From: Camelus dromedarius
Taxonomy: Eukaryota
Length of the DNA: 64,000 nt
NCBI RefSeq assembly: GCF_036321535.1
Contig: NC_087444.1
Span: forward strand, 65,410,001 to 65,474,000
Direction: 5' to 3'
The stretch's first letter is position 1, and the number at the start of each line of letters is the position of its first letter. The position numbers and the translations under genes were made by a program. Below, piece after piece: positions 1-36,254 of the stretch. The notes below the pieces were generated by a model. That model did no database searches and was not told the DNA's origin. It worked only from the letters and a program-made list of their open reading frames with translations.

Positions 1-539
1 ATCCCTCAGCCCCAGAGCACTGTAGCCACCCCTGTGCCCCTACCTGCCAGTGCCTGCCTGCTCTTCGCTGCTGGAGGGTTGATGTGTGCTCCGTGCCACT
101 GCTCCTGCTTCCTGTGCCAATGCTGCACTTTCTGGACAGACAACTGTATTCAGAACTGCCACTGCCCAGCCCCTGGGGCCCTGGTGAGCAGTCTACCGGC
201 TGCTGGCCTGAGAAGGGCTGTGGTCGCTGCAAGGCTGCCACAGGTGGCTGGCATCACTACCTGTTAGCCCAGCCCCCACCCAGCACCACCACCCTGGAGG
301 AGCCACTGGTCTGCACTGCCACTGGAGACTTCCACTTCCACACATTTGGAGGAACCCACTGTGAATTCCCTGGTTCCTGCGTCTACCACCTGGCAGGTCT
401 CTGTGACACAGCCCATGCCAACTTTGAGCCCTTCAGCCTCAATTTGACCCCACTTCTGTGGCCATGTGGCTGCCCAAGGACCTGACCCCCTCAGCCTATG
501 CTCTGAGGCTAGATGTGAGTCTGAAAGATCTCAACTACT

Positions 540-1610
540 TCTAGGGGAGGTTCCAAAGGCCCACACTGACCCACCATCCCTCACTGTCCCCACTATTCTC
601 AGATAACCCATAGTGACCCTTCTTTTCCTGTTGATGCCTCTTTTACTGCCTCTCCCACTGGTCCTCAAATATGTCCACTCCAATTCCCTAGTGGCCCTAT
701 TTATCCCTTACCGGTGGTTACTGACCCTCCTTCTCACTGACTTGCTTGTCGACTCCTTCCACTGACTCTGACTTGTTCATGCTTAACCACCCTTGAGACT
801 CCTACTACCCTCCCATTAACTCTCCATTGAGTCTTCCATTGACTCCCTGATTGATTCCCCTTTAACCCACCGGCTCAGCCCTGACCTCCCCATTGACCCT
901 CTCTTTCACCCCCCTTTTAATATCCCATTAACCCATTGCCCCTCCCCAACTGATCCTACTACTGTTATATTGACTCACCCATTAACCCTGTTTACTGCCC
1001 TGTTGACCCCACCCCACACTGTTACCCCACTGATCTGTGCTGAGCTATCTAATTGACACTCCCAGTGATCCATGACTGGCCCATTAATGCCCCCACTTAC
1101 ACCACTGCAGATCTTGCTATTGAGCTTCCTGTTGATACTGACTCCTCCATTGAATTCTCAGGCTTTTCTGTTACCCAGCTGAGCCTCTTTGACTCATTAT
1201 CTCATCCATTGAGCCTTTCATAGTGTCTCATTAATTCATCGACTCACCTTCTAACTCCACCCTCATTTACCCTCCAGTTGAGCAGCACCCCTTGTTCCAC
1301 CCAAAGCCTTCTCTTGATCTTCAGTGACTCATTTCACTTTCTCCATTTGCCCTCTTCTTGATCCTCCCTTTGATTCCTCACTGACTTTTCCCACTGACTC
1401 CCTAATCATTCTTTTTTTTACCACCTTCATTGATTGTCCATTGACCTCTCTTTAATTCTGACCGTTCAGTCACTCTATCATTGATCCCCCATTGGATCCT
1501 TTGGTGACCCCCCATTTAGCCTCCATTGACTTCCCACTGAATTCTCTTTTGATCCCTAATGAATGTTCTCCTTGATCTCTCTCTGATCCTTCATTGACAG
1601 TTCCAAGAAT
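540..1610 (+). repeat. Degenerate C/T-rich repeat with ~12-bp period (consensus near CCCATTGACTCC) filling an intron of the pseudogene
   Basis: CATTGA/CACTGA-type cores recur; for example TTGA ends at 830, 842 and 854. The tract is bounded by the donor at 515 and the acceptor at 1673. Confidence 0.55.
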
Positions 1611-1774
1611 GTCTGCTGACTGCCAATACTCCCTTCCCTGGCTGTTCTCCCACCCCCCATGCCCTCTCTGTAGCTGGACGGAATTCTGGAATCACTGTCC
1701 TTCTTTCGTGGCCATTACCTCCGAGCCTACAGCTGGGGCTGTCTGTTCTGCATAGACACACAAAACATCTCAAT

Positions 1775-2050
1775 AGATTTTTAATTTGTATGTCTTATTA
1801 GGAGGTTGAGCATCTTTTCATATATCTAAGAAACATTTCTATTTCCTTTTTTATTAACTTTCTGAATAGCCTTTGCCCATTTTAAAAATATTGTGTTGTT
1901 GAAAAAGGAGAAAAAAATATTGTGTTGTTGGTCTTTTTGTTTTTGATTTCTAGGAACTCTTTACATATTTAGGGAAATTAGTCCTTTGTCTGTGATATGT
2001 GCTACACAGGTGCTTCATTGTTTGTCCATTCATGTTTATGATGGCTTTTT
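1775..2050 (-). mobile_element. L1 fragment, antisense
   Basis: T-rich sequence typical of antisense L1 (ttgagcatcttttcatat, ctttgcccatttt, ggaactctttacatattt). It contains an 18-bp direct duplication, aaaaatattgtgttgttg. Confidence 0.5.
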
Positions 2051-2212
2051 GGACCCGATATTGAGTCTTTGTCTCTGCAGATTGGGGAGGCATTGGTCCG
2101 GCCTGACTGCCAAGAGTGCTGTATGTGCTTACATGGCCAAGGCCTTCAGTGCCAGCCCTTTTCTTGCCCACAAACCATAGGTTGCATCCTGGGTGAGGAT
2201 GTACAGTGTTGT

Positions 2213-2497
2213 TGTTGCCGAAAGTTCCACCCCTGTCCCTGATGAGCCAAATAACTCAGGGACTGGGTCTTGGAGCTTAGAAGAAAAGAGGTAGCTCTAT
2301 TACTTTGCTGGGCAAAAGGTACTCACAGCAGGCTAGTGCCTTCAAAACTGTGAACCCACTTTGGGGATGGGGTAGGTTATATAGCCATGGCTCAAACAAT
2401 AAAGCATCAATAACAATCAAAAGAATCATTTTCTCATCAGAAGACTTAGAATGGCATCATGATGCCTCCAGGCGGCCAATTCTATAGAGGCTAGCAA
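2213..2497 (-). mobile_element. ERV LTR-like insertion inside pseudogene exon (c)
   Basis: Begins TGTTGCCGAAAGTTCCACCCCTGTCCCTGATGAGCC, recalled as an artiodactyl ERV LTR end. Candidate 4-bp TSD TTGT at 2209-2212 and 2498-2501. Removing 2213-2501 rejoins the flanks in frame. Confidence 0.6.
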
Positions 2498-3049
2498 TTG
2501 TCACTTTTTCGATCTAGCACCTGGGGGCCTCTTCACCACCTTTGATGGCTTCAGTGGGCTCACACCCATGCCTATCACACCCTGTGCCTGTGAGCTAGCC
2601 ACATTGGTTGGTTCTAGGCCCCAAGATCCTGACTGGTTCCATGTAATTTCTGACTTCCCAGACTGTCCTGGCTGCACTGCTCCCAACCACAAATGATCAT
2701 CAGCTTCAGAGATGGCTGTGCAGCTGTGGGACCCAATTGGGAAATATGAGTAAAGGGCTACCTCAATTCCAGCCAAGACCTTTGTGTAACCTAGCACTGA
2801 TCTCAGGGGCCTCTTAACCCCTCACTGACCTTCCATACCCTTTTCATGTAGAACTGTTCTCCCATAATCCTCTGATCTCACATTGACCTCCACTGACTAA
2901 ATGTCCTTGCCCTGATCTCCCGTGACCCTCTAGACCCCACATAAACCTCACCCTGGACTTCTCAGGACCCGCTGACCCCACCTTGACATGAGAGCTGCTG
3001 AACTCCTGGAAACTACTGACTGAGTGACCAGAGCTATAATAGGGCAGCA

Positions 3050-3460
3050 CATGTTGGAGTGATCAGGGCTTGAATAGGCAGGCTGTGGGAACCCAGAGGC
3101 AGTACCTCCAGTTTAGGGGATCAGTCAAGGCCTTCTGAAGGAGATGACAAATGAGCTGAGACCTGACATTAAGCTGGGAAAGAGAGCAAGGAGGAGAACT
3201 GTAAGACAAGGCCAGAAAAAGGGAGAAGCTACACTTGGGGCTGCGGTAAAAGTCAACTAATGAGTATAAAATATCCCACTAAATGTCTGTGGAGTTAGGA
3301 CCAAGGAGGCTGTTGGTGATTTAAGGAATCACATCAAGAGGTCATCTCCTGGACTGCAGGGCTGAGGAATGAGACAAGTACAGACAGCAGGCATAGACCC
3401 CTCTCTTGACAAGATGTCTATGCAGAAAGGGGAGAAAAAAGATCAGCTAGGAAGAGGCAG
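3050..3460 (+). mobile_element. L2-like fragment
   Basis: Typical L2 3' motifs (aggccttctgaaggagatgac..gagctgagacctga). Confidence 0.45.
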
Positions 3461-3481
3461 AGTATCTTAGAGCTGATTTAT

Positions 3482-3483
<2 letters not shown>

Positions 3484-3533
<50 letters not shown>
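3484..3533. repeat. (TTG)16 microsatellite
   Basis: Perfect 50-bp run visible in the sequence. Confidence 0.95.
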
Positions 3534-4778
3534 ATTGAGATGGGAGAAACTTGGGGATGTTTAAGTGCTAATGGGAAGAAGCCAGACAAGGAGAGGTTGG
3601 AAACCCAGCAGGGAAAGATGCCAGGGTAGAGATCCCTGGGTCCCCAAGGAACACGGAAGCAGGAGAGCCACAGAAGAACTAGAATCCAGGCAGGCAAAAT
3701 GGGTAGTAATTATAAGGGGAAAACAAACTTGAAATCCCATGATGAGAAATAGAATCACCTGTGAGTTCAAGGCTACTTGTAGGAATGGGGGAATGGACCA
3801 GCAAGAGAACTGCTTGGGTATCTGCCACAACCTAGCAGGTAAGCTAAGCCAGAGCCTTTGGCTAGAGGGTCAAGAGACTCCGACTATGTTTCTTAGAATT
3901 CTAGTGTAACTTTGGGTAAGTGACTCAGTCTCTATGCCTGTTTCCTCATCCACTAAAAGTGGTGATAACACTACCCACTGCATAGGGTAGCTGTGAAGAT
4001 AAAGTAAGAGGCTTGGCATAAGTACTCAACAAGTATAAGCTGTGATAGCTCTAGCAGCCACTTTTATATTATTTTTTGGAGAGGCAGTATAGATAGCAGA
4101 GTGGCTAAAAACACAGGTCATGAAGTCAGACCCCTAGGTTTCAAAAACCTGACTCTGCCACTTAACAACTATGTAAACCTAGACAGGCTATGTTACTTTT
4201 CTGGCCCTAGTTTCCTAGGAGGCAGAAGGCATATGGTGCTGCAGATCTAGATTGTCAGAGTGTTGGTGAGGATTTAATATCACTTAAAATATTAAATGTT
4301 TAATAAACTACCTTAAATAGTCACTATTTTAAAATAAATGTATTACATAAAATATAAATTAGGTGACAATATATTAAAAAATCAATTGCATTCTATTATA
4401 TTGCATATTATGTTAACATACTGTGTTACACATTATAAGATAAATATTTATAAAGCCCTTGGAATAGTGCCTGGAACAGAGTATGTGCTCAGTAAATGGT
4501 TATTAGATTATGAAGACACAGGTGAGAGAGATATGACAGATTCTAAAAGCTTTTTTTCTCTCTCAAGCTTCCTTTTAAGAAAGTGTTCATTATAGAAAAT
4601 TTCAAGCGTCACAAAAGAAGAGAGAAGAGTGTTATGAAACCCCATTATGGTTACAAATATTTTGCCATTCTTGCTTTAAGGCATCTTTCCCTCCCACTCT
4701 TTTTGTTTTGTTTGTGTTGGAGGATTTTGAAGAAAATCTCAGAACTTATTCCTCTAGCAAAGACCTGAATATGCATTT

Positions 4779-4951
4779 ATTTTTATTTTTTAAAAATCTA
4801 TTTCTTTGGGGGCAGGAGGTAATTAGGTTTATGTTTTTTGGTTTTTTGGTGTTGTTTTTTTTTTTTTAAATGGAGGTACTGGAGATTGAACCCAGGAAGT
4901 CCTGCATGCTATGCATGCGCTCGATCTCTGAGCTATACCCTTCCCCCAGAC
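4779..4951 (-). mobile_element. Vic-1-type tRNA-derived camelid SINE
   Basis: Reverse complement reads ggggaagggtatagctcagag..gggttcaatctccagtacctcc, then an A-rich tail and aaacctaattacctcc. 12-bp TSD GAATATGCATTT at 4767-4778 and 4952-4963. Confidence 0.85.
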
Positions 4952-4969
4952 GAATATGCATTTCTGATA

Positions 4970-5951
4970 GAGACACGGGCGGGCGGGATTCACAGTGGTT
5001 TCTGAGTTCCCCTTTGACTCCCGGACTCCGGCCCTCATCCCAGCCCCTGACCCGCCTCCACTCTCCACAAAGGAACTGACGCCCCACGCAGCTCGCTGGC
5101 CAGGTGTGCGGAGGCGTGGTCGCAAGCTAAGCGAGGTCCCCTACGCTCCAGGTGCTGGTAGGGCCCAAAGGGGCCATGGCCTTGCGGGCCTCCCCAGTGC
5201 TACGAGGATGCCTCCGCGTATCCTGTGGGGACTACAACGAATTGCGACGGATGACCTGATATTCCCTGGAGGACACCGGGGTGCCAGCCTAGTCGACGTG
5301 TCCCAAGCATGCTGGACTTGGGGCTTCAACAGCTGGTGAGGCCCCTCCCTCTCCTACCCCCGGGTCCGACTCACATCGGCAGAGGGCGCTACTAGCCCAG
5401 CTCCCTGCGCTACAGGCTGCCTTTAGGGGATTGCAGCCCACACCATCTCTCTATGCTCGTCTTCCTACAGCACTGAGCTTGTAGTGCTGGCTATGACCCA
5501 ACGCTTCAGCGCCTGACATCGTCCCTCTGTGCGTCCCCAGGGTTGGGACCCTCAACGCACACCTGCCCCGGGGGTGAGAACGCACGGAGATGGCTTTAAT
5601 AAATAACGTGGCAAAAAACATGCTTGTGCCTGTCTTCTCTCTCTCCCAGGACCCGGGAGTTAAGTCAGGACACCCTGTTTCCTTCCGACCCCAAACCTTA
5701 GAGTCTGACCGCCTCAGAACTACTGTCCTCACAAGGACACCTATTCCCTGTTGGGCGGGCCAGTAATTCAGAGGCCCCGCCCCTTATTCGCGACATTGTG
5801 ATGCAACTACAGCGACAGCCAATGGGACGCGACGGTGCCTCATAGCAGGAGGCGGAAGTGCCTGTTGCCTTGCAACGCCGCTTTTCCCAACAGTGCTGCC
5901 GCACGACTTTGTGACGCGTTGACTGTGTGCGCCCGCGGCCCAGCTGTAACC
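4970..5951 (+). promoter_or_regulatory. CpG-island promoter of SDHAF1
   Basis: CpG-rich. GC box (ggccccgcccc, ~5774), TCGCGA (~5786), CCAAT (~5819) and ETS GCGGAAGTG (~5851) lie upstream of ATG 5952. Confidence 0.7.
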
Positions 5952-6308
5952 ATGAGTCGCCCCAGCCGGCTGCAGAGACAAGTTCTGAGCCTGTACCGCG
6001 AACTACTGCGCGCCGGGCGCGGGAAGCCGGGCGCCGAGGCGCGGGTGCGGGCCGAATTCCGGCAGCACGCCAGCCTGCCACGCTCCGACGTACTGCGCAT
6101 TGAGTACCTGTACCGCCGCGGGCGCCGCCAGCTCCAGCTGCTCCGCTCCGGCCACGCCAAGGCCATAGGCGCCTTCGTGCGTTTGGGGGAACCGATCGAG
6201 GAGACCCGTGGCGCGGGAACCCCAGGGACTCCGCCTGACGTTGATGACGGTCCAAGGAGACCGCTTGACAGCATGGGGGCACCGGAGACCCCGTCCGAAG
6301 GACGGTGA
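5952..6308 (+). CDS. SDHAF1: Succinate dehydrogenase assembly factor 1 (LYR-motif protein), single coding exon, 118 aa
   Basis: [59 protein letters not shown] matches recalled SDHAF1. The LYR motif is present, the ATG is in AACCATGA context, and synteny fits. Confidence 0.97.
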
Positions 6309-6400
6309 CTGGCAGAAGGGCTCGCCCGATTGCCCAGGGGAACGAGGGGCCCGCCTGACTGCGTGGGGGGACCAGGGAACCCGCCTGATGGAAGGTGAGC
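6222..6400 (+). repeat. Degenerate 30-bp tandem repeat, 6 units, spanning the SDHAF1 stop codon
   Basis: Core CCGCCTGA or variants at 6231, 6261, 6291, 6322, 6351 and 6381. Confidence 0.7.
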
Positions 6401-6952
6401 GGTCTTAAGAGACTAGATCGACAGACTGGGGATAGTGGAGAGCCTTCTTGATGATGAAGGGTCCGATGGCGAGAGATGCCCGACCTTGCCCGATGTATGG
6501 TAACGGGTCAAACTTCCCCATGAAGGCTGGGGGCGGCCTGGGTCGCCGGCTGGCTGGACTCTCAAGCTGAGAGCTACTTACCCTCAGGCCTGGGGAGCCG
6601 GGACGCCCGGCTGTTGGACAGAAAGAAACTGACATGCCCCTCTCTTGACTCCTGAGAACATACCTACTCCTGGTTCCTCAAGGAAACTCCCTTCTCCTGT
6701 ATTTAACTCTGAAAAGAACAGACTTTTTGCTGAGGAGTTTGAAAAGATGCCCTGATGGAGGATGAGAAGTCTGGAATCCCCCTTAGAAAAACCTTTGCCC
6801 CATTGTGACAAACTTGGACCAGTGAGGAAGGGGCTAGGGTTCTTTCACTTCAGCTAATCAATTAAAGACCTCCTCAAGACCTCTACATGATGGTTCTGAG
6901 GGGGAGCCGCAACTCCTGCCCACTTTCCTGCTCAGGACTGTTGGACAAAGGG

Positions 6953-6958
6953 AATAAA
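6953..6958 (+). terminator. Likely SDHAF1 polyadenylation signal
   Basis: AATAAA about 650 nt after the stop; an ATTAAA alternative lies near 6860. Confidence 0.55.
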
Positions 6959-7832
6959 ATTGGGGATTTGCTTACTTCCCTTTTGGTGGTCTTAATGTGT
7001 TTGGGGGTTTTTGAAGTGTCCCCCCCCAACATACCAAGAAGTGACCCTCTGGGAGGGGATGGGTGTGGGGAGCTGTCTCTTCCCCCTCTGGAGCCTCTAG
7101 ATTGGCAGATTGGTTGGAGCAGCATAGTTCTCCTGAGCAGACCCATGGAGGGAACCCACCCTGGCTTGACCCCAAAGATGCCCCAGTTGACTCCTTAATG
7201 GAGAGTAGTGAAGCAGGAGAGGAAATGATAGAGCAGAGGAGGCCTGGCTGGTAATCCCTGAGGCAGTGGCGGGGCCCTCAAACCTGACTGAGTCCAGCCT
7301 CAGCTATAGGCTGAGATTTTTGCTAGCAACGCCCAGGGGTAGGGGAGGAGAGAGAGACCCATGGGCCACAGGCATACCTCCTCCCATGTCCTCACATGGA
7401 CCTGCTCTAGACATTCTCTGGGGTACTGCATTTTGCAGCCCTCAGCTGTATTTGCACCCATGTCTGTTAAATAAATGGAAAGCAGTTGAATTCTTAGCAA
7501 GATGCAGTTGAGAGGAGGAGGAAGGCCTTAGGAAAGGAGCCCAGACCTTGGACCAAAGGGAGGATGGACAGATGAGAAACAATCTCTGCCCCAATCCCAG
7601 TGGGGGAGGAGGTACTCGAATAGTTATAAGGTGGAATTGAAATGTGAAGAATTATAAGGTGTTTGCCAGAAGGTAGGGATAGACTTTTAAGCAGGAGGAC
7701 CAGTGTGGGTAGAGGCCTGGAGTGGACAAAAGGGAGAAATGCAGGGGCCCAGCTGGGACTTGGAGTGCCCAGAGCACAGGCTGTGAGGTTTGTGCATGTG
7801 GCTTCTACTTCAGCTTTGTCTCTGGTTGGTAC

Positions 7833-9343
7833 TCAGACCTCCGCAGCCACGTTCATCTCTCGCAGCCTGTTTTTCAGCAGGGTGATGCAGTTACTCCTGG
7901 CCTGGCTCCATTTCAGAGTGAAAATCAGAGTCTTGAAAGTGGGTAATGGGGTTGAGTCCTACCCATCTCACCCCCATTACGTCTCCACCTTTAATCTCCC
8001 TCTTCCTCACTTCTGTTTTTTTTTCCCCGTCTTGCTCACTTCTGACTCCAAGATCTTGAGCCCTAATAAACTCCAGGATGGGAGCTTCTGGCAGGGCTGC
8101 AAGCCGTGATCGAGTTCCCACTGGGGCCGGGCATCCTGGTCAGGAAGGGAGACATTCACCTGGGTATTACCAGTGAATGGAGTTTGCCTGGTAAAGAGGA
8201 TGGGGGAGGAGAATGCCCGATTTGAGGGAGGAGATTGTAGGTGAGTGAGCAGTGATTATAGACTCTGGAAATGGAATGCCTGGATTTAAACCCCAGTTCC
8301 AACGCTTACTGATTACATGATCACAGGCAAGTGATTTAACCTCTTTGTGCCTCAACACCCTTATCTGCAAAATGGGCGTGCTAATTGTGCCTCCCTCATG
8401 TGGCTGTTATGATGATATAGTGAAATACATGTGGCAGCAGATGATAATGTCCCAACCCCATAACCCTCCTGCCTATTTGTGTTCACTTGTAGCTGCACAA
8501 GAGTGTTCTCTAGAGGCTGCCAGCTTCCTACTCTGAGCCCCTGCAACTCTGCTCTTCTGCTTGAGGGCTTTCTTGAGTTATGTGAGGTGGGTTAATGGCC
8601 TCAGGAGCAAACGGAAGCTTGTGAGGGACAGCCGTCATTGAATGAATTGAGTTACTACATTTCCTAATTCTCGTAATTGTACTCTAGTTGCGTAAGAGGA
8701 TGCCCTTGATCTTAAGAACTGTACGCTGAAGTATAGTTACTCTCAAATGGTTCCAAAAATATGTGCACATACATATCAGTGAGACCGAGTGGTGAAGCCC
8801 ATGAGGTAAAATGTTAACAATTGGTGAATGTGGGTGAAGGGTGTATGGGGGTTTGTAGTACTAGTCTTAAAACTTTTCAATAACTTGAAACAAAACTAAA
8901 AGTTACAAAAAACAAAATAGACAATGGTCATATCAATGTGTCACTGGTCATTTATCTTTGAGCACCAGAGATCTTTGTACAGAGGGCACATTTTTTCAAG
9001 AGATTTGAGAAAAGGAAAGCCTGTATTTTCTGAGACTTTATTAACTTCTGTACATAACTTCTTCATAGACTTAGCCATCAATTTCAATTAAATTTCTGAA
9101 CTTGGAAATAATAACATCTGCTCTCCCTTACAGATTCTGATCTCCACCCTATTAGGAATGACAGGTCACTAGAATATGTCCTTGTCTTGGGTCACAAACT
9201 CAGTGGTCCCAAAGGGGCCAAGACAATGACCAGGAGCCATGGGCCTTGGGGAATTCTGGGACACTCACAGTACCCCATGAGGAGTCACCAGGCACACCCA
9301 TGAGTTCCCACCTCTCCTGCTCAGCTCCCTCCGACAGCGACAT
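7833..9343 (-). pseudogene. Unassigned cryptic exon chain encoding a spectrin-repeat-like peptide (pseudogene or unannotated gene)
   Basis: Exon-like segments 9343-9269, 8571-8487, 8159-8040 and 7931-7833 have AG/GT boundaries and splice without stops until a terminal TGA at 7833-7835. The peptide includes SWQPLENTLVQLQ|VNVSLPDQDARPQWELDHGLQPCQK..LKILESE|TLIFTLKWSQARSNCITLLKNRLRE. Confidence 0.4.
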
Positions 9344-26600: not shown

Positions 26601-29600
26601 ACTGGCCACATTTCAAGTGCTTAATAGCCACAGGTGGCTTGTGGTTACTGCATTGGATAACACAGACACAGAACATTTCCATCATCACAAGGTCTATTGG
26701 ACATGAATGCTATAGTGAAATTAACACCCTCAGAATAGGATCTGCTACTGAGTAAGGGATCAGTAAGTGTTGACTCTTATTATCCTGTGACTTTGATAAC
26801 TCACAGGCCTCAGTTTCATCTGGAAAATGGGGAAAACAATCCACTTCATAGGCTGGTTGTCTGGTTGAAACATCTTTGATATACACAAAGTTGCTTAGCT
26901 GCACTGAGTGTGACTAATATCATTGTGTGAGGTTCCCTCACCTCTCTAAGCCTCAGCTCTTTGTCTGTAAAATGGGCTAAATAATAATGCCTACTTTGGA
27001 GAAGTGGTGTGGGGATCAGAGCAGTGCCTGACACACAAAGGGCACTTAGTGTGCATCAAGCCCTGTTCTAAGGGCTTTACACATTTTAACTCATTTAAAC
27101 CTCATATGACCTGCTGAAGTGGCTACTGTTAGCTCCATTTTACAGATGAAGAAACTGATGTCCAGAGAGGTGAAATCACTGGCCCCAAGCCCCACAGCTA
27201 GTATGTGGCAAAGCTAAGATTTGGCTGAGCAAATCCCTGAGCCTGAGCTTATAACCATTGTGCTCTGCTGCTCCTCTATGGGCAGAGATTGTGATGTCTT
27301 CAGACAAAGGGTTTCACCTCTCTGAGCCTCGTACAGTCTTCTGTGTTGTAAAATGGGAAAAGTCAACCCATCCTGCTTTCAAAATTGTCACACGTGGATT
27401 TGATCAGATCATGTATAGAAGCTTTCTAGATGGGGTTGATTCATGCAAAACTCTTGATTAGGAAATAAAATGTGACTTTTAGGGTTTCTCTCTGTGCAAA
27501 GAAACAAAATGCAAATTCATTTCAGTGGCCTGCAGGTCTGGTGTCATCTGCTAACCTCTGCTAACCTCTCCACCTCACCCTCCCTTGGTAACTCCCCTGT
27601 TACACTACCCCTTCCCTCCTCCAGGCCTTTGTACCTACTGTTTCCTGTGTCTCCATATTTTTGCAAGATGAGCTCCTTCCAATCAGATACCACCCTAGCT
27701 TTTCAGAGAAGCCGTCTCAGAACACCCTAGCTAAAAACAACCTCTGCCCTCAGCCAGGGACAATTTACTAAATCCAAGTATTTAATGGTTTTCAAGGCCC
27801 TTGTTGCTACCAGAAATTATCTTAACTATGGGCTTACTTTATTGACTGTCTCTTCTTCAATAGAAAGGGAACTCTGAGAGCAGGGCTGGGACCAACACAG
27901 CCCTTTATCCCAAGGATGGGCTGGGTCCAGCATGGAGCCTGAGGGACACCAGGTAAATGAATAAAACTTGGAATTCCTGGATGAGTGAAGATTCTCTCTG
28001 TCCTCTGGGCCTTTAGACCTGCTCCCTTTCCCTTAGACCCCCCCCCCTTCCTTTCTTCTCCTGGCTCACTCATCTGCATCTTCAAGTGTGTCTTCCCCAT
28101 CACACCCTTGATCACTCTGACTTGTACTTTTTTCCTAATCAAAGTATTGATCACCCTGGGAGCACAAGTGGGCCCTGCATGGGGACTAAAAGGCCCGGGG
28201 GACCCAAATGGGGCAGAGCTGCACTGATCACTCTGCTTGTGCTTCCTCATGACAGCCATGGCTGCTCTGGGCTGTCACTGTCAGGTGTTGGATCTGTCTT
28301 CCAACATGGACTGAGAGCTCAGCCTAGGGTGGGTCACAAAGGAGGCACTCACAGAGCAACTGTGAGGTGAAATCAATACTGTGTGAATGATCAGGAGGGT
28401 GGGCAGACAAAGGGGAGAGGCTGCACTCTGCCCAAGGACCCATCTCTGAGGGATGAGGGCTGAGCCCTGCCCTCCCATCCCTGCTCCAGTCCCTGACCTT
28501 CTGGCCATCCAGTAGCACGCGGTCTCCCAGGCGCAGGCCCAGTGCACTGAGCATGAGATTGCCTGGGACGTTGTCATAGTTGGGTAGTGTGACCTTGGGG
28601 AGGGCACAGGAGAGTGGCACAGCCTCCTCCAACAGTGTCCGCAGCTCCTTGGCCACCAGTGCCGCCTCTGCCTTGTCCAGGGACATGTCCATGGGGTCTG
28701 GGACCACCTCCGCTGGCACCTGTCCCTTTCGGTTCTGGGCATCAACATGAAGAGAGAGGGTGAAAACTCAGTGATGTAATCCACACCCCCACTGAGCCCC
28801 TTCCCCCCACCAAGAGACCCCAGGTCTAGGTGAAGCAGAGGTGGGCCTAGGTCATACCCTGGACCAACATGGAAATAGAAGGGGTGTGACATTAAGGTGT
28901 AGACCACGGTCCCCAGGGAAGTCCACTCAAGACCTCAGGCTGGGGATGTCAAATAATTGAGGGTCGGACTAGGGTGGAGCCAATAGGGAATGAAGGTCCC
29001 ACTTCGGAGCTGTAGGTCACGGCCTCAAGGCCAAGACCCCAAGCCTGGAATGGGACCATGTGAAGGTCAAACACTGAAAATGGTACTGTGTGGTACTGGC
29101 TCAGGGGTCCAGCTAGGCCAATGCAGAATGGGGAAAGGCAGAACCTCAGGGGCGCAGGCCATGTCCCCCTGCGATATCTGTGCCTGGGATGCTGCAGAGA
29201 AACTGATGTTGGGGATAGGACCTGGAAATGGATGGGTCAGGGGTCAAAGATCATATTGAGGGCTTATGGGGGGCCAAGGGTCTCTGTGTACACACAGCCA
29301 TGGGTCCAGCCCAGATTTAAAGAAGATACTCCTTGCAGGGTGACCCTGGACGAATCACTCTTTCTGCCTCAGTTTCTCCATTGTAAAATAGGGCTCAAAA
29401 CAGGGTTCACCTGACATATCATGAACACTAAGTAAATGTCAGCTGTTACATTTGTTGAATGTATAGAAGATTTTTGCCATATTTTGAGAGCTTCAAGAAA
29501 CTGAAGTGGTCCTGCCCCCTCCCCACCATAGGTCTGCTGGCCGGGAAAGGGATTGGGGAAGAAGGAGAAGGAAGACAACAGGGCTGGGCCAGGGTGGCAG

Positions 29601-32600
29601 TACCCGAAGAGCTGGGTTGGCGCCGTGCTCCAGCAAGCATTTGGCCGCGCCCAGGCACAGGTTGGAGGCAGCGATGTGCAGGGCTGAGCCGTGGTTGAAG
29701 TCACTGCACGTGGAGTTCACCACTGGGAAGTGGGTGAGAGGAGGGTTCCGGGTGAGCGCCCTTGGCACCCCAGCCCTCCTGGTACCTTCCAGCCTCCGGA
29801 AGTCCATCTCTTCATCCATCTCTTAAACCGCAGGCTTCAGTGCCTCTCGCAGCCTCTGCTGCAGAGCCCCGCCCCACCGCAGAGCCCTGCCCTCCTTGGC
29901 CACTCCCCTCCTGACCAGCTCCTGCCAGGCCATGGGGTTATGGACCACTGAGCCCCATCTCGCCAACCTTCTGCCTGCAGCCTCCCCTCCCACCCGTATC
30001 TCCCACCAGGCCCCATCACTCACCTGCCCTGCCTGCTTCACATCACGTCTCCTTTCCCCACATCCGGGCACCCTCCTTCTGCTTCCAGATCCCCTTCCTC
30101 GTCTAGGTCCTGTCCCCTCCCAGCCCAGCCCCTCCTCCTCACCTCTGGGCCGCGCGCCCTTCAGCAGCACGCGCACGAGGTCGGGCACATCGAAATAGGC
30201 CGCGTAGTGAAGCGCGTTCATGTTGGTCCAGCGGCTGCGCAGGGTCACGTCCGCGCCCAGCGCGAGCAGCTGCTGAGAGAGGCGCACAGCCGCCGCGGGG
30301 TCCCCTGCGCGACAGCCCGGGTCAGCTTGGGTCCCTTCCTCTAGAGTGTGGACCCAGCGCATGGGGAAGACCCTTTGGGATCTTAGGCTGCGGGTTCAAG
30401 TTGGGGGTCCACGGGCAGGGTTCTGAAGGTGTCGGGTGTGGGAGCCTAGGTTTTGGGTTTGTCGTTTGGGGGTTGGGACCCTCACCGACTCCGTGAGCCC
30501 CAGCCTTGCAAGCATAATGGAGCAGTGTCATGTCAGTCAGCCCATCACGATCATTCACGTGGCAGCCTCGGCGCAGAATCTGGGAGTACCAGGGGACCAA
30601 GCAGGGTTACCCAAACACGTGAAGGACCCCACTGTCTCCTCCCTGGCTTCCCCAGCGTTCTTACCTCATTGCCAATGACATCGATTTTGTGCTGGACTTG
30701 GGGCACCCACTGGCGCACAATGGCGAACAGCTCAGGGATGGTAGTCTGCGGGTCAAACAGAATCTCCTGGCAGGCAGGGTCGTTGGGGTCGAAGAAGGTG
30801 AAGGCTGGGGTAGTGAGAGGTCCGAGGTCACCCAGGCAAAGTGACCCCCTCCTTCCATCCTGAGGCAGGGGAGTTCTAGGTCTTTGCCTTTAAGACCTTC
30901 TAATGCAGGGTCTCAAACTGGTGGCACATGGGCCACAGGCATTTTCTGTGTGGCCAGCACGGGGTTTCAAAATTGGGAGGGTTTCACCTAAAAATGTGGG
31001 TGCCCAGCATGTCTGGAAAAACTGGAAGATCAGGCAATTCCTATGTAGCAGCAAACTCCACCCCTTGAAATGAGGGGGTGCCCAGCATGCCCAACAGTGG
31101 CTGCTGCTGCTCTGGCCCCTGTTGCCCTGTCAGAGCATGGGCACAGGTTGGCCAGATCTCCAGAGTAAAGAAAATTAAAAAGCCAGAGATCACAGTTTTT
31201 ATGAAAAATCTCCCCCAATTTTTCAAAACATATCCATGAGCAGGGTCCAAGCTGTGACTAGCCAGGGTGGTGCCCCGAGGAACTGCATCTCCCCTCTTAG
31301 ACTCTGTAGTAACGTCAGCACCCAACACAGGGCCTGGCACAGGGCAGGAGTGCAGCGCACGTTGAATGGATGAGCAAATGAATGACCAGATGATACAGAG
31401 CCCAGGGAAGAGCTGCGGAGGAGGGTTCTCCAGGAATCAGCCTATTAAAACCCCAGTCACAGCACAGCGCTCCTTGGCTGGGAACCCTGGCTCCCATCAC
31501 ACTCAGATTACAAACCAAAGTCCTCATGCCAGCCCGCAGGCCCTGCACAAACTGGCCTCCTCTGTTCTCTGCCCTCTCCCCCTTCACTCATTCCTCTCGA
31601 GCCACACTGGCCTCCTTCTGTCCTTCCAACTCGCCCGACAAATTCCTGTCTCAGGGCTTTGTGCTTGCTGTTTTTCTTGCCTGGGCCAGTCTTCCCTCAG
31701 ATCTTCTGAAGGCTTCAGAGAGGCCTCCCCAGACCATCTTGGCTAAATCAGCACCTCTGCCCTTCTTTATTTCTTTAAAAATGTCACTTGGCTGTTTCCA
31801 TGCTGCCGTGTTCACTCCCTTATTCGCAGGGCCCAGCACAGCACCTGGCAGGCACTAGGTGCTCAGTCAGTCTTGACGGTATTAATGTACAAATTTCTTA
31901 AATAAATACACAAGTTTCTTTTGGAATCCACCTTAGCCTTCTCTCTGTCCTAGATCATATTTTCAGATTCCTTTGCATTCTGTAACCAAACCCTCCTTGT
32001 TCTACAGGCAGGATTCTGGGGGCAGGGGACAGGCACCCTAGACTCTTTAAGACTTCCCTCTGGCCCACAGGCCCCAGCCACATTTCCAGAGAAGATATTC
32101 CAGTTTCCTGGGGTGAATATCCAACCCCGGACACCCAGATAAAGTTCTTATTTTTCTATCAGACTGAGGGCAACTTGTGGCCTCCCTGACCCCGACCCAC
32201 CTCTAGTGGGTGACATGTCCACAGATGTCATCCCTCCTGCACTATCTTGGTGATGCCTACTCTCAAAACTTGGAATCTAGTTTCTGAACTTACAGCTGCT
32301 GGGGATTCCCAGCCAACATCTTCTAAAAGCCCTTCCTGTATTCAATCCTGGCTGAGCTCCACCTTTCCTGCTCAGTAGCCAGAAGGAGCTGTTAAAAATA
32401 TAAATCAGACCTACCACCTGTCTGCTTTCAAATACCCATCCCCTACAACTGCTCTCCCCTCATCACACTCAGGATAAATCTAAAGTCCTCATACTAGCCT
32501 TTAAGGTCCTTCCAGATCTAGGCACTGCCAACCTCTGACCTTAACTCCCTTCACTCCCTAAGGGTAGCACCATGATTTTCTCTGTTCCAAGTTCAATCCT

Positions 32601-33735
32601 GCCTCAGGGCTTTTGCACTTGCCACTTACAGCCTGGAACTCTCTTTCCCTAGCTCTTACATGGCTGATTCCTCCTCGTGCTCTGGGTCTCAACCCAAATG
32701 CCACCTCATCAGAAAGACCCACCCTGACCACTCTGCCTCAAGATGCTGCTCCCTAGCCATTTTCTATTATATCTCCACCTTTTAATTTCTTTCATATCAT
32801 TCACTCGTCTGAACTTATCTGATTCATTTGTTACTTGTTTAGTCTCACCTTCTCTCCTGAGAGCAGGGATCATGCCTGGATTGCTCACCATTAAATCTCC
32901 ATCTCCCAACACAAGACTTGTCACAGAGTAGTCATGATGGATAAATATTGCTTGGTGAATGAGTAGACACTTTCAGTTTCTCCAAGAGGCCACCCTCTCA
33001 GCGCTACATTCTTGGAGACTTTACTCCTGTGGTAATCTCTCCTGGGTAACCCCCTTCCCCTGAGCCTTTCCCTTGTTAACCCCCAACTCATCCTTAGGTC
33101 TCCCTTAAATGTTATTTCCTCAGGGAAAGCATATCTTAAAAAGCTCTTGTAGAATCCTGTTCTTGGCAAACACAATTCTCATCACGTCTTGTAATTATAT
33201 ACTTATATCGTTATACTTATTTGTGCAGTCATTATTGAGGCCACCTGTGAGTTCTCTCAGGCAAAGACTGGGTCTGTCATGCTCCATGCTGTGCCCCCAG
33301 CTCCGAGGTCCACAGCAGGCGTTCAAAAATGTTGAATGACTAAATGACTGAATGATGTGTCATGAATCAAAGATTAGGATTATCCCAATTCTATTCTCCA
33401 ATGGGTGAATCAATGAATTAATGAAGGGGGTGGGGATCCAAGGGCCATGACTCCTCCAGACCACCATCAAATGCTCCAGAATCCTCCCACCATCTCCACC
33501 AGCAGAGTTCAGCCAAACCTCCCTGGCCACCCAAGGCTCCAGGCCATATTGCAGGGTGGGGAGGGTGGTTACCATAGTCCTTGGGGAGGGGGGCAGGTGC
33601 CGAGGGGTGCACAACAGGCTTCTGCCGGCGCTCCTGGGTGGGGCTGGGGGGCTCCGGGACAGGCTCATCCTCCTCCTCCTCTTCTTCCTCCGCCCTGAGC
33701 GGCGGGGCCATCGGGGCGGGATCTGTCTTAGTCAT
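23688..33735 (-). CDS. CLIP3: CAP-Gly domain-containing linker protein 3 (CLIPR-59), 13 coding exons, 546 aa
   Basis: Exons 33735-33573, 30804-30665, 30579-30486, 30304-30143, 29722-29604, 28734-28498, 26288-26153, 26011-25883, 25235-25092, 25023-24900, 24676-24612, 24199-24127 and 23742-23688 total 1641 nt. Acidic N-terminus, ankyrin repeats, two CAP-Gly domains (GKNDG, GKHDG) and C-terminal [17 protein letters not shown]. Confidence 0.97.
25440..25835. repeat. Degenerate ~72-bp tandem repeat (about 6 units) in a CLIP3 intron
   Basis: Unit core AAACTGAGTCACAGAAGTCAGGAACCCA recurs near 25448, 25517, 25589, 25662, 25737 and 25803. Confidence 0.65.
26510..26705. mobile_element. MER3-like DNA transposon
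   Basis: gctgccctgtc..tagccactggccacat..cacactggccacatttcaagtgcttaatagccac..ctattggaca. Confidence 0.6.
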
Positions 33736-34239
33736 GGTCCTTGGTGGCCCTCAGGGGGGCAGGAGCAGAGTTGGGGGCAGCCGTCAGGCAAATCCTAGGG
33801 GCAGAGGTTAGCTAGAGAGGGTGCCCCACGGTCTCCGGAATCTGAGACCCCAGACGCTTCCAGGGCTCCGGATGGCTCCCACGCCCCCAGCTCTGGATTT
33901 GGGGGCATCACAGAGACGCCAGTCATCCATCAGAGGACCCTGGTATATGGGTCCAACGCCTACCACTTCCATTACCCGGTCCTGTCTCCCATTCTTCTCC
34001 CGCGTCAGGCCCCTCAGTATAGGCCGCCCCCTCCCCGGGTTTGTTTATCTCAGGATGCAGGATGCTTTGCCCCTCCCCTTCTCCGCAGGCCTCCCTCTAC
34101 CCAGCTTACCTCGGGTGGATGGGGCTGAAGACCAAAGCTGAGACCCGGGGAATTGGAGTAATGGGGTGTCAGTGCCGGGAGAAGTGATGGGGGAGAAGGA
34201 GACAGAGAGAAGGGGACGAGGCCCAGACGCCGAAGAGGG

Positions 34240-34330
34240 GTGGGGGTGGAGAGGGAGGGGCGCTGAAGGCGCATGCGCTGTGTCACCCCCAACCAGGCGC
34301 GGGGGCGGAGATACCGCCAGGCTGGTCGCA
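34240..34330 (-). promoter_or_regulatory. CLIP3 promoter region
   Basis: Perfect NRF1 palindrome GCGCATGCGC at 34269-34278 and a GC box (~34303) in a CpG-rich patch about 0.5 kb upstream of the first coding exon. Confidence 0.55.
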
Positions 34331-36254
34331 TTGATGAAAGGGCTGGAGGCAGCGATGCAAAGGGGATAGACACCTAGGATGGGGAGAGGAAGAAGCAATG
34401 GCCACGAAGAAGGATGTGAGACATGGAGACAGGAGAAAGATGAAGCAGGGGCCAGAGCGCAAAGAGAGGGATGGGAAAATGGGTACAGTTCGTTTTGCCC
34501 ATCCCGCTGTGATAGCGCCTTCCCGCGGGCCCCCGAACCAGGCCAGTTAGGGTAGAGGTCTAAGTGTGTGATGGTGATGGGTATTTTATCTCCCTCACAT
34601 ATCAGACCTGATCCCCTCTCCGTGCTCGCCCTATACAAGGGATGTCTCAGATGATTCTGTAGAGATTCCTCTAATCAGCTTCATCGTCATTATCATCGCA
34701 TAGTGCCCACACAGCACTTACCAGGCCCAGAGAAGTTAAGCCACTTGCCCAAGGGCACACAGCAAGTAGGTGATGGAGTTAAGACTTGAATCCAAGGGGC
34801 CTAGCTGTAGAGTCTGGGCTTTTAATCTCCATGCTACATGGCTTTGGCGGTGTCTAGGGGATAGATCGATCTGCCAGTGGACCCCTCCCCTAGAAGGCCC
34901 TCCAGGAGCTAGCCCAGGGCCCAGGCTTTCTTGTTTCCATCATCATGGCTTAGCTATCATATCTGGCTGTCTGTAGCCTGGACTGCCCACAATCTTCCCA
35001 AACTGAACAAGAACAGCTGACTTTGCCTTCCACCCCTCATCCTTCTAATGGGCAGGCCCAGTAGCTCCACCAAAAATATTTCCAGAATTTCATCCCTCAC
35101 CCCCTAACCCCAGGCCCTCATCCTGGTCTTTCCTTCATCCTCTACCACCTGGACTATGGCAGCAGCCTCCTCTGTTCTCCCTGCTCCCTCCTCACCACGC
35201 CCACCCTATATGCAGCTATAGGTACCTAGGAACACCTTTTACATCAGCGTCCTCCTTGAGGTATCTGCTTACTGGACCTTACTCCAGGTAAAAGTCAATG
35301 TTCCCAACAACAACCCACAAGACCCTATATGAACTTTCCCATTATCTCTCCAATCTCACCTCCTCTCACTCCACTCTAACCACGCTGACCTCACTTGCTC
35401 CTCCTCACCCCAGTACCTTCACACCGGCTCTTCCTTCTGCTGGAATGTGCTGCCCCCAGATACCTGGTTCCCTTTCTCCTCTCAGGTTTTTGCTTATTGG
35501 TGCCTTTTCAATGAGACCTTCTCTGCTCCATCAAAAATTGCATCCCAACTCCCCCTCTCCCCCCGACACACTCACTTCCTTCCCTGCTTTAGTGTTCTCC
35601 ATAGCAATGCTGCCCTTCCCCAGTTTACACCGTAGATGTTGGGGCATGTGCAGGGGTTCTTCTCCCTGGAACTTCTAGGCCAGTTCCTTCTCATCATCCT
35701 GGTCTCCGCTCAAACACTGTCTCCTTAGACAGTCCTCCCCCTCCCCCAGCCCATATTTTCATTCATCTTTATAGCACTTATCGCAATCTGAAATTGTCTT
35801 GTTTATTAGTTTACTAGTTCATCTTCTACTCAAGCAGAATGTGAGCACCATGAGAACAGGATTTTTGTCAGCTGTGTTCACTGCTGTATCCCCAGCTTGG
35901 CACCAGGCTCAGCAAAGGTTATGAGGTGCTCTTCAAAACCAGGTACAACTCTCCCCAAACACTCAACCCTTGTTCTGCTGGGAGGATGTTTTACTGACTG
36001 CAAAGATTCCAGCTGGGGTTGGCAGGGACCTGGTACCCATGTAATCGCTGCTGTCAGGGGTCGGGTCTTAGGCCCAGGTTGGCCCTAAGGTAGGTGCAAG
36101 GGGTTCATAAGAGGAGGTGGTGGGAGCCAGGCCCTGGAGGGAGGCACTACTATGCCCCCGGCATGGGTGGTGGGACTGGGCCAATTCCATGTGCGACATG
36201 TCTCTCTTCCTCTCTCTTCTATCATCTGTCCCATGACATTCTCTGTCCTGGTGC

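What the first reader, a model, noticed from the sequence alone, without database searches (positions are those of the whole stretch)
1..2749. Decayed FCGBP-like TIL/VWD gene upstream of SDHAF1
Seen: three exon remnants with splice sites in the expected places rebuild TIL-TILa-VWD, the V[DN]G continuation exon, and TILa plus a GDPH-less terminal VWD (LFTTFDG..CEL..WFHV..FRDG..PN). Established: this ending resembles the last two VWD modules of FCGBP, and human FCGBP lies several Mb away at 19q13.2. I recall no such gene between LRFN3 and SDHAF1 in human. Several frameshifts, stops at 2694 and 2747, and GDPH>GDFH indicate a dead gene here. Inference: an FCGBP/tectorin-family paralog once sat at this locus and may still be intact in other mammals or non-mammalian amniotes.
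Basis: partly seen in the sequence, partly recalled or inferred. Interest (0 to 1): 0.8.

Follow-up and report, generated by a model that had tools for sequence, protein, structure and literature searches.

The report
Dead FCGBP-like gene beside camel SDHAF1
The stretch is the broken 3' half of a second, little-known FCGBP-type mucus-protein gene that is still intact next to SDHAF1 in dogs, seals, ferrets, shrews and a marsupial but has decayed in camels, which makes it a real but ordinary case of lineage-specific gene loss.

Summary
Window 1-5516 carries the 3' half of a unitary pseudogene. It runs colinear, introns included, with a gene that RefSeq names "IgGFc-binding protein-like". That gene lies between LRFN3 and SDHAF1 in black-footed ferret, walrus, smoky shrew and fat-tailed dunnart.

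The window is 98.8% identical to a Camelus ferus scaffold, so it comes from a camel. Lesions in the window:
- four 1-bp deletions in the first exon remnant;
- stops at 80, 542, 2747, 5077 and 5128;
- a lost splice donor at 545;
- a deletion of about 5.1 kb that removes about 595 codons;
- an insertion of about 300 bp inside one ancestral exon.

The intact orthologues are under purifying selection: omega is 0.25-0.34 and 190 of 198 cysteines are conserved. Their products have a hydrophobic N-terminus and carry the FCGBP N-terminal domain plus 6-7 VWD units.

- GDFH is ancestral to this paralogue. None of the six orthologues examined has a GDPH motif.
- The "intron" at 2240-2513 is an insertion.
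- Two more exon remnants lie at 5060-5336 and 5469-5516.

Dolphin and black rhinoceros carry independently decayed copies at the same place. I found no paper on this paralogue. The scan had not noted it elsewhere.

The parts
1..544 (+). Exon remnant A (ferret P0059 aa 1847-2030): TIL, TILa and the start of a VWD with GDFHFHTFGG. It has 1-bp deletions near 60, 99, 196 and 473, TGA at 80-82 (CGA>TGA) and TAG at 542-544.
545..1673 (+). Intron remnant. The ancestral donor GT is now GG at 545-546. The sequence is colinear with the walrus intron at about 72% identity and is rich in CCATTGA/CACTGAC motifs.
1674..1759 (+). The first 86 bp of exon B (aa 2029-2057, LDGILESLSFFRGHYLRAY), with its acceptor AG kept. 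The rest of the exon is deleted.
1760..1761 (.). Junction of a deletion of about 5.1 kb (ferret L001 29553-34651, walrus L002 30890-35721). It removed aa ~2058-2652, i.e. most of exon B and three further exons.
1762..2074 (+). Remnant of the intron upstream of exon F. It includes an old AT-rich repeat fragment shared with ferret, walrus and rhinoceros.
2075..2212 (+). Exon F, first part (aa 2653-2698): TILa.
2213..2519 (.). Insertion of about 300 bp inside exon F. It is present in both camels, absent from ferret, walrus, shrew and rhinoceros, and unique within the window. Its origin is unknown.
2520..2749 (+). Exon F, second part (aa ~2699-2788): start of the last VWD (PGGLFTTFDG). It has a 1-bp deletion near 2683 that brings TGA 2694-2696 into frame, and TGG>TGA at 2747-2749. 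The donor GT at 2750 is kept.
2750..5059 (+). Intron remnant, colinear with ferret, walrus and rhinoceros. It holds a (TTG)18 microsatellite at 3484-3537.
5060..5336 (+). Exon G remnant (aa 2788-2882): the rest of the last VWD. It has several small indels, a 24-bp deletion, a 1-bp deletion near 5239, TGA at 5077 and TAA at 5128.
5469..5516 (+). Remnant of the terminal mini-exon, with the ancestral stop codon position at 5514-5516, about 435 bp upstream of the SDHAF1 ATG.
5952..6308 (+). SDHAF1 coding sequence (118 aa). It is the downstream neighbour and the synteny anchor, not part of the pseudogene.

Best explanation
Window 1-5516 is the 3' half of a non-processed (unitary) pseudogene of a second mammalian FCGBP paralogue. 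That paralogue ancestrally lay head-to-tail between LRFN3 and SDHAF1. In caniform carnivores, Sorex shrews and a dasyurid marsupial (and probably the elephant, where only a partial 1749-aa protein was seen) it still encodes a protein of about 2150-3065 aa. The protein has a hydrophobic N-terminus and no strong transmembrane-like stretch, so it is probably secreted. It carries the FCGBP N-terminal domain followed by 6-7 VWD-C8-TIL(-TILa) units, none of them with the GDPH autocleavage motif. In the camel lineage the gene was inactivated and has since decayed neutrally through 1-bp frameshifts, nonsense substitutions, loss of a splice donor, a 5.1 kb deletion and a 300 bp insertion. It now makes no protein. 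Shown: homology, synteny, the lesions, constraint in the intact orthologues, and absence of GDPH. Inferred: secretion and a mucus-type role for the intact protein, the timing of the loss, and the lack of any residual function in camels.
For: Exon-1 translation: Pfam VWD E 2.3e-6. Nearest proteins among 1.8 billion are carnivore 'IgGFc-binding protein-like', E 3.5e-41, 54-59% identity. These genes lie directly upstream of SDHAF1 (Complex1_LYR) in ferret, walrus, dunnart and shrew; an LRR/Ig/fn3 (LRFN3-type) gene lies upstream in ferret and walrus. The window aligns colinearly with the ferret and walrus loci through exons and introns at 72-80% identity, and tblastn gives an ordered series of remnants for aa 1847-2882. 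Lesions were mapped codon by codon. The same frame breaks appear in an independent Camelus ferus assembly that is 98.8% identical, and 14 DNA-type runs hold 92-95% of the words, so assembly error is unlikely. Four orthologues map exactly onto genomic DNA in 16-19 exons with no frame corrections. Their omega is 0.25-0.34 and 190 of 198 Cys are conserved. Their domains are IgGFc_binding + VWD x6-7 + C8 + TIL + TILa, and none has GDPH. The camel branch omega is about 0.5 (bootstrap 0.37-0.81), above the point estimates of 0.31-0.43 for the ferret, shrew and walrus branches, though the intervals overlap.
Against: RNA-run contigs hold about half the words of the stretch, so some transcription or DNA carry-over exists. 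A camel branch omega of 0.5 rather than 1 means constraint lasted for part of that branch, or the estimate is biased because broken codons were dropped. I could not search the rest of the camel genome for a second intact copy of this paralogue.
Confidence: 0.95

Rival explanations
1. The remnants are transcribed as a non-coding RNA (a transcribed pseudogene, or read-through into the SDHAF1 promoter region) that has some regulatory role.
For: RNA-type runs labelled reproductive-system metagenome hold 44-56% of the sampled words of 1-2749. The last remnant ends about 435 bp upstream of the SDHAF1 ATG.
Against: The intron-only stretch 560-1660 is held by the same runs at the same share, 0.48-0.51. 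The signal is therefore not confined to exons and fits unspliced background or genomic DNA carry-over. Identity to carnivores is no higher in the exon remnants than in the introns beyond what past coding constraint explains.
Confidence: 0.1
2. The gene is alive in camels, and the lesions are assembly or sequencing errors or belong to one defective allele.
For: Large repetitive VWD genes are often mis-assembled, and annotated lengths of this gene vary between carnivore assemblies.
Against: Every frameshift and stop checked in exon A is identical in the window and in the separate Camelus ferus assembly. Both show the same HSP frame pattern, the 5.1 kb deletion and the 300 bp insertion. Many independent DNA runs hold 92-95% of the words. 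There are more than ten disabling lesions.
Confidence: 0.02
3. The stretch is a duplicated or translocated fragment of the canonical FCGBP (or of ZAN or TECTA) rather than a separate locus-specific paralogue.
Against: Canonical FCGBPs, the Camelus ferus one (P0128) included, are only 35-38% identical to the orthologue of this locus, whereas the locus-specific clade is 52-94% identical. Introns are colinear with the carnivore gene at this same syntenic place. The clade is distinct with 100/100 support. Pfam reports no MAM, NIDO or ZP domain in the orthologues.
Confidence: 0.02

Closest known systems
Canonical FCGBP (IgGFc-binding protein; goblet-cell mucus protein; human 19q13.2)
   Same: The intact orthologues of this locus share the N-terminal IgGFc_binding/FCGBP_N domain (PF17517) followed by repeated VWD-C8-TIL(-TILa) units, and a hydrophobic N-terminus. 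In the tree they sit inside the amniote FCGBP clade and, in the best tree, next to mammalian FCGBP.
   Different: Identity is only 35-38%. The locus is different: it lies between LRFN3 and SDHAF1. There are zero GDPH motifs, against five in the ~3000-aa human, Camelus ferus and cat FCGBP proteins retrieved here. According to PMC4948705, cleavage in VWD domains probably forms the reactive anhydride behind FCGBP's covalent binding to mucins; the link to GDPH is from my own knowledge, so the paralogue cannot be assumed to do this. The clade has a long stem branch (1.2-1.7 changes per site).
RefSeq/Gnomon models 'IgGFc-binding protein-like' of Caniformia, Sorex and Sminthopsis (e.g. XP_059237595.1, XP_004396563.1, XP_074162790.1, XP_055992064.1)
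   Same: They are the orthologues of the window's remnants. Position, strand and exon order are the same, and identity is 54-74% across the remnants.
   Different: They are intact and constrained, whereas the window's copy is broken. They are automatic annotations, and I found no paper that describes them.
Unitary pseudogenes of mammals (lineage-specific loss of an otherwise conserved single-copy gene)
   Same: The copy is not processed (introns are kept), it is syntenic with intact orthologues, it has many disabling lesions, and separate lineages (camel, dolphin, rhinoceros) lost it independently.
   Different: Nothing unusual in kind.
Zonadhesin (ZAN) and alpha-tectorin (TECTA)
   Same: They share VWD-C8-TIL units.
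   Different: Pfam reports no MAM, NIDO or zona pellucida domain in the intact orthologues, and a hydropathy scan of the ferret protein finds no strong internal transmembrane-like stretch. Zonadhesin-like proteins score lower, at 29-31% identity.

Membership tests
FCGBP family (IgGFc-binding protein and paralogues) | N-terminal FCGBP_N / IgGFc_binding domain (PF17517) | tested here: met
   The window starts at aa ~1847, so the domain cannot be seen in the window itself. The syntenic orthologues have it (E 1e-44 to 8e-47). The Camelus ferus locus upstream of the window keeps decayed remnants of that exon (aa 20-63 and 233-450).
FCGBP family (IgGFc-binding protein and paralogues) | Several VWD-C8-TIL(-TILa) units in tandem | tested here: met
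   Window: VWD E 2.3e-6, TILa E 0.008. Orthologues: 6-7 VWD, 5 C8, 6 TIL and 4 TILa.
FCGBP family (IgGFc-binding protein and paralogues) | GDPH autocatalytic cleavage motif in most VWD domains | tested here: not met
   None of the six orthologues examined has GDPH, whereas the ~3000-aa canonical FCGBP proteins have five. The window has GDFH, as do ferret, walrus, shrew and elephant. This is a property of canonical FCGBP rather than of the Pfam-defined family.
Canonical FCGBP (orthologue of human FCGBP) | Groups with mammalian FCGBP in a tree and shares its locus | tested here: not met
   It forms a separate clade with 100/100 support, and identity is 35-38%. The locus is LRFN3-SDHAF1.
Unitary (non-processed) pseudogene | Disabling lesions in the ancestral reading frame | tested here: met
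   At least 6 frameshifting indels, 5 in-frame stops, a lost donor, a 5.1 kb deletion and a 300 bp insertion.
Unitary (non-processed) pseudogene | An intact, constrained orthologue at the syntenic position in other species | tested here: met
   (omega 0.25-0.34).
Unitary (non-processed) pseudogene | Introns retained (not a retrocopy) | tested here: met
   The DNA alignment is colinear through the introns.
Unitary (non-processed) pseudogene | No intact copy of the same gene elsewhere in the genome | not testable with these tools
   Only this window and one Camelus ferus locus could be read. The protein search returned only the canonical FCGBP and the 341-aa fragment for camels.
Zonadhesin / alpha-tectorin | MAM plus mucin repeats plus a transmembrane segment (ZAN), or NIDO plus a ZP domain (TECTA) | tested here: not met
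   Pfam reports none of these domains in the orthologues, and the ferret protein has no strong internal transmembrane-like stretch.

The most novel reading that the evidence does not exclude
Therian mammals ancestrally had a second FCGBP gene, next to SDHAF1. It has lost every GDPH autocleavage site yet stays under purifying selection in Caniformia, shrews, elephant and marsupials, and it has been lost independently many times (camels, cetaceans, rhinoceroses; possibly primates and rodents, not tested). If no paper has described it, this is an unstudied mucus or secretory protein. Its patchy retention could be tied to a lineage-specific mucosal or reproductive function.
Probability: 0.5. Interest if true: 0.45.

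Novelty: new member of a known kind. Interest (0 to 1): 0.33.

Why it matters
For the camel genome this is simply a correct annotation: a dead gene, not a hidden one. The wider point is modest but real. Canonical FCGBP is a major and poorly understood mucus protein, and its chemistry is thought to depend on cleavage within its VWD domains (PMC4948705). The locus reveals a sister paralogue that lacks GDPH entirely, is conserved over about 160 million years (my own estimate of the marsupial-placental split) in some mammals, and is lost in others. That offers a natural comparison for asking what the VWD units do without autocleavage. It is also a candidate for studies that correlate gene loss with traits. 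Gene-loss screens and FCGBP phylogenies should treat it as a separate orthogroup, so that 'FCGBP-like' models are not mixed with FCGBP.

Tried and rejected
- A phmmer search of the exon-1 translation against PDB sequences found only a chance ribosomal-protein hit at E 1.1, so the single decayed fragment is too weak for that route.
- Pfam found nothing for the fragment 2514-2693 alone. Its identity came only from the orthologue alignment.
As a substitute I compared the share of words held by RNA runs for the whole stretch and for the intron only.
- I first took 1760-2040 for a young L1 insertion that broke exon B. The alignments show it is old intron sequence shared with carnivores and rhinoceros, and that the break is a deletion.
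- I first placed the exon A donor at the GTGAGT at 512. The multi-species alignment puts it at 545.
- The synteny test in sauropsids failed. The turtle protein was too long for the look-up, one lizard protein was not on record, and the Rhineura gene has no called neighbours within 10 kb.
- Literature searches for a described paralogue found nothing relevant (FCGBP with SDHAF1 and pseudogene; Fcgbpl1, FCGBP2, FCGBP-like).
- Whether rodent Fcgbpl1 belongs to this clade could not be tested. No rodent protein appeared among the high-identity hits.
Full report
**What is in the sequence**

The window is mammalian. The SDHAF1 coding sequence lies at 5952-6308 on the + strand. ORFs typical of CLIP3, THAP8 and WDR62 lie further downstream. 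The syntenic loci of other species carry a KASH-domain (SYNE4-type) gene and a 2OG-Fe(II) oxygenase (ALKBH6-type) gene after SDHAF1.

These include EHCSHPCAPTCQC, FWTDNCIQNCHCP, VCTATGDFHFHTFGG, LDGILESLSFFRG, IGEALVRPDCQECCMCLHGQGLQCQPFSC and LFTTFDGFSG.

Pfam recognises a VWD start at nt 312-440 (E 2.3e-6, 28.5 bits against a cut-off of 22.9). It recognises a TILa weakly at 2081-2239 (E 0.008).

**What it is homologous to**

I searched the exon-1 translation against 1.84 billion representative proteins with HMMER. The best hits were a walrus protein at E 3.5e-41 (59% identity over residues 1-157) and a ferret-cluster protein at E 7.6e-35. Camel and rhinoceros 'hypothetical proteins' followed. 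Fish and turtle FCGBP-like proteins scored much lower.

The sources name the best hits 'IgGFc-binding protein-like'. They come from walrus, seals, mustelids and, in a later look-up, canids and Sorex shrews.

**Synteny**

I looked up the genomic places of four of these proteins. Each gene lies directly upstream of, and on the same strand as, a 104-119 aa Complex1_LYR gene, which is SDHAF1.
- Mustela nigripes: 2897 aa.
- Odobenus: 2641 aa.
- Sminthopsis crassicaudata: 3065 aa.
- Sorex fumeus: 2151 aa.

In the ferret and walrus loci a 626-628 aa LRR/Ig/fn3 gene (LRFN3-type) lies upstream. In the dunnart locus the upstream gene (664 aa) has no Pfam record, and none is called upstream in the shrew locus. 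A KASH-domain gene follows SDHAF1 in the ferret, walrus and shrew loci.

**Colinearity and the true extent of the remnants**

tblastn of the ferret protein against window 1-8000 gives an ordered series:

| Ferret protein (aa) | Window (nt) |
|---|---|
| 1847-2027 | 3-541, with hops between frames 3, 1 and 2 |
| 2030-2057 | 1677-1760 |
| 2653-2698 | 2075-2212 |
| 2695-2789 | 2466-2758 |
| 2788-2882 | 5074-5333 |

A remnant of the 14-codon terminal exon lies at 5469-5516. At the DNA level the window aligns colinearly with the ferret and walrus loci through exons and introns at 72-80% identity. This excludes a retrocopy or a transposed fragment. The finding therefore extends to about 5516, not 2749.

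**Which genome**

The window is 98.8% identical over 8 kb to Camelus ferus scaffold KB017008.1, so it comes from a camel. That scaffold also supplies the 12 kb upstream of the window. It carries decayed remnants of the 5' half of the gene, from aa 20 onward. These show frame changes inside single ancestral exons and gaps such as aa 64-232 and 930-1208. The whole gene is dead, not only the part in the window.

**Lesions**

I projected the ferret codon frame onto the window and aligned exon A across seven sequences. The lesions are:
- 1-bp deletions near 60, 99, 196 and 473.
- CGA>TGA at 80-82.
- CGG>TAG at 542-544, next to a donor changed from GT to GG at 545-546.
- A deletion joining 1759 to 1762. 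It removes ferret 29553-34651 (5.1 kb), i.e. most of exon B and three whole exons, about 595 codons.
- An insertion of about 300 bp (2213-2519) inside what is one 408-bp exon in ferret. Both camels have it. Ferret, walrus, shrew and rhinoceros lack it.
- A 1-bp deletion near 2683, which brings TGA 2694-2696 into frame.
- TGG>TGA at 2747-2749.
- In exon G, several small indels, a 24-bp deletion, TGA at 5077, TAA at 5128 and a 1-bp deletion near 5239.

The Camelus ferus assembly shows the same states at every exon A lesion and the same frame pattern elsewhere. Fourteen DNA-type runs hold 92-95% of the sampled words. Assembly error is therefore not a credible explanation.

**Is the gene really alive elsewhere?**

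The ferret, walrus, dunnart and shrew proteins map exactly onto their genomic DNA in 16-19 exons. No frame corrections are needed, and the exon structure is conserved.

Pairwise Nei-Gojobori omega is 0.25-0.34 over 2039-2755 codons. In the alignment, 190 of 198 ferret cysteines are conserved.

The domain content is IgGFc_binding at the N-terminus, then 6-7 VWD, 5 C8, 6 TIL and 4 TILa. There is a hydrophobic N-terminus and no strong internal transmembrane-like stretch. I infer a secreted, FCGBP-type protein.

**GDFH is not decay**

None of the six orthologues examined (ferret, grey seal, walrus, shrew, dunnart, elephant) contains a single GDPH. The ~3000-aa canonical FCGBP proteins of human, Camelus ferus and cat have five each. 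The exact string GDFHFHTFGG is conserved in ferret, walrus, shrew and elephant. It is a family trait of this paralogue.

**Origin of the paralogue**

Against the ferret protein, members of this orthogroup are 52-94% identical. Canonical FCGBPs of all vertebrates are 30-38% identical, and zonadhesin-like proteins are 29-31% identical.

I built trees from the first 900 residues.
- The locus-specific clade is monophyletic with 100/100 support and has a long stem.
- It sits inside the amniote FCGBP clade (99/95).
- The quick tree puts it as sister to mammalian FCGBP, platypus included (99 SH-aLRT).
- The careful tree keeps that grouping with weaker support (78/95).
- A grouping with birds and squamates is not rejected (p-AU 0.13).

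A duplication on the mammalian stem is favoured but not settled. Amino-acid composition differs from the rest of the alignment, and the long branch calls for caution. An orthologue in non-mammalian amniotes is therefore not expected, and the synteny checks I tried there gave nothing.

**Other losses**

The dolphin Sousa chinensis and the black rhinoceros carry decayed remnants directly upstream of SDHAF1. These have frame changes and deletions of their own.
- The dolphin keeps aa 2171-2204 and 2595-2658, which the camel has deleted. It lacks exon F, which the camel keeps.
- None of the camel 1-bp deletions in exon A is shared with dolphin or rhinoceros.
- The T of the CGA>TGA codon at window 80 is shared with the dolphin. 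That site is a CpG, so parallel change is plausible.

A three-taxon decomposition over 390 clean codons gives a camel-branch omega of 0.53 (bootstrap 0.37-0.81). The point estimates for the ferret, shrew and walrus branches are 0.31-0.43, and their intervals overlap the camel one. Taken at face value, about a tenth to three quarters of the camel branch was neutral. This leans towards a loss after the camel-cetacean split but does not exclude an earlier one. This dating is a rough inference.

**Expression**

As a substitute I compared the shares of sampled words held by RNA runs. Two RNA-seq runs hold 0.56 and 0.44 of the words of 1-2749. They hold 0.51 and 0.48 of the intron-only stretch 560-1660. 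The signal is not exon-specific, so there is no evidence of a spliced transcript. Unspliced background transcription or DNA carry-over both fit.

**Comparison with what is known**

PMC4948705 (Lang et al. 2016) defines FCGBP by its N-terminal domain and many VWD units. It reports likely FCGBP orthologues in most vertebrates. The passages I read do not mention a second mammalian paralogue. Full-text searches for FCGBP with SDHAF1, and for FCGBP-like, Fcgbpl1 and FCGBP2, found no description of this gene. Automatic RefSeq models of it exist in many species. The scan's own notes hold nothing on it.

**Verdict**

In kind it is ordinary: lineage-specific gene loss. The modest novelty lies in the parent gene. 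It is a GDPH-less FCGBP paralogue that appears undescribed in the literature, is constrained in some mammals, and has been lost repeatedly in others.

Noticed in passing
window 547-1673 and 2800-2960: The intron remnants are strongly C/T-rich on the + strand (GC skew -0.33 over 1-2000). They are studded with degenerate CCATTGA / CACTGAC / TTGATCC motifs; 7 of the window's 8 CCATTGA lie in 520-1660. Only two short tandem arrays are called. The stretch still aligns with the walrus intron at about 72% identity.
   Followed up: partly
window 2213-2519: An insertion of about 300 bp inside an ancestral exon. It is present in both camels, absent from ferret, walrus, shrew and rhinoceros, has no other copy in the 64 kb window, and has no obvious poly-A or terminal repeats. 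Its origin is unknown.
   Followed up: partly
window 80-82; L006 about 7560: Camel and dolphin both have T at the first base of the codon that is CGA in ferret and walrus, giving TGA. This is either a shared ancestral nonsense mutation or a parallel CpG transition. The rhinoceros has AGA.
   Followed up: partly
window 3484-3537: A (TTG)18 microsatellite in the intron remnant.
   Followed up: no
window 5469-5516 and 5952: The 3' end of the dead gene lies only about 435 bp from the SDHAF1 start codon. In the intact species the gap is 0.5-1.2 kb. The 3' end of the FCGBP-like gene and the SDHAF1 promoter must therefore overlap or abut.
   Followed up: no
window 1-2749 and 560-1660 (runs X15, X16, X25, X26): RNA-seq runs labelled reproductive-system or mammal metagenome hold about half of the sampled words of both the exon remnants and the intron. 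This suggests host DNA or pre-mRNA background in those libraries.
   Followed up: partly
L001, L002 and protein clusters: Annotated lengths of the intact gene vary widely between closely related carnivores, from about 2900 aa in grey seal, sea lion, raccoon dog, arctic fox and black-footed ferret down to split models of 456-572 aa in domestic ferret, mink and badger. Either the assemblies are uneven or the gene is beginning to decay in some mustelids.
   Followed up: no
window about 12.1-12.3 kb, 59.2-59.4 kb and 63.7-64.0 kb: Runs of N (503 in all) lie inside the window.
   Followed up: no
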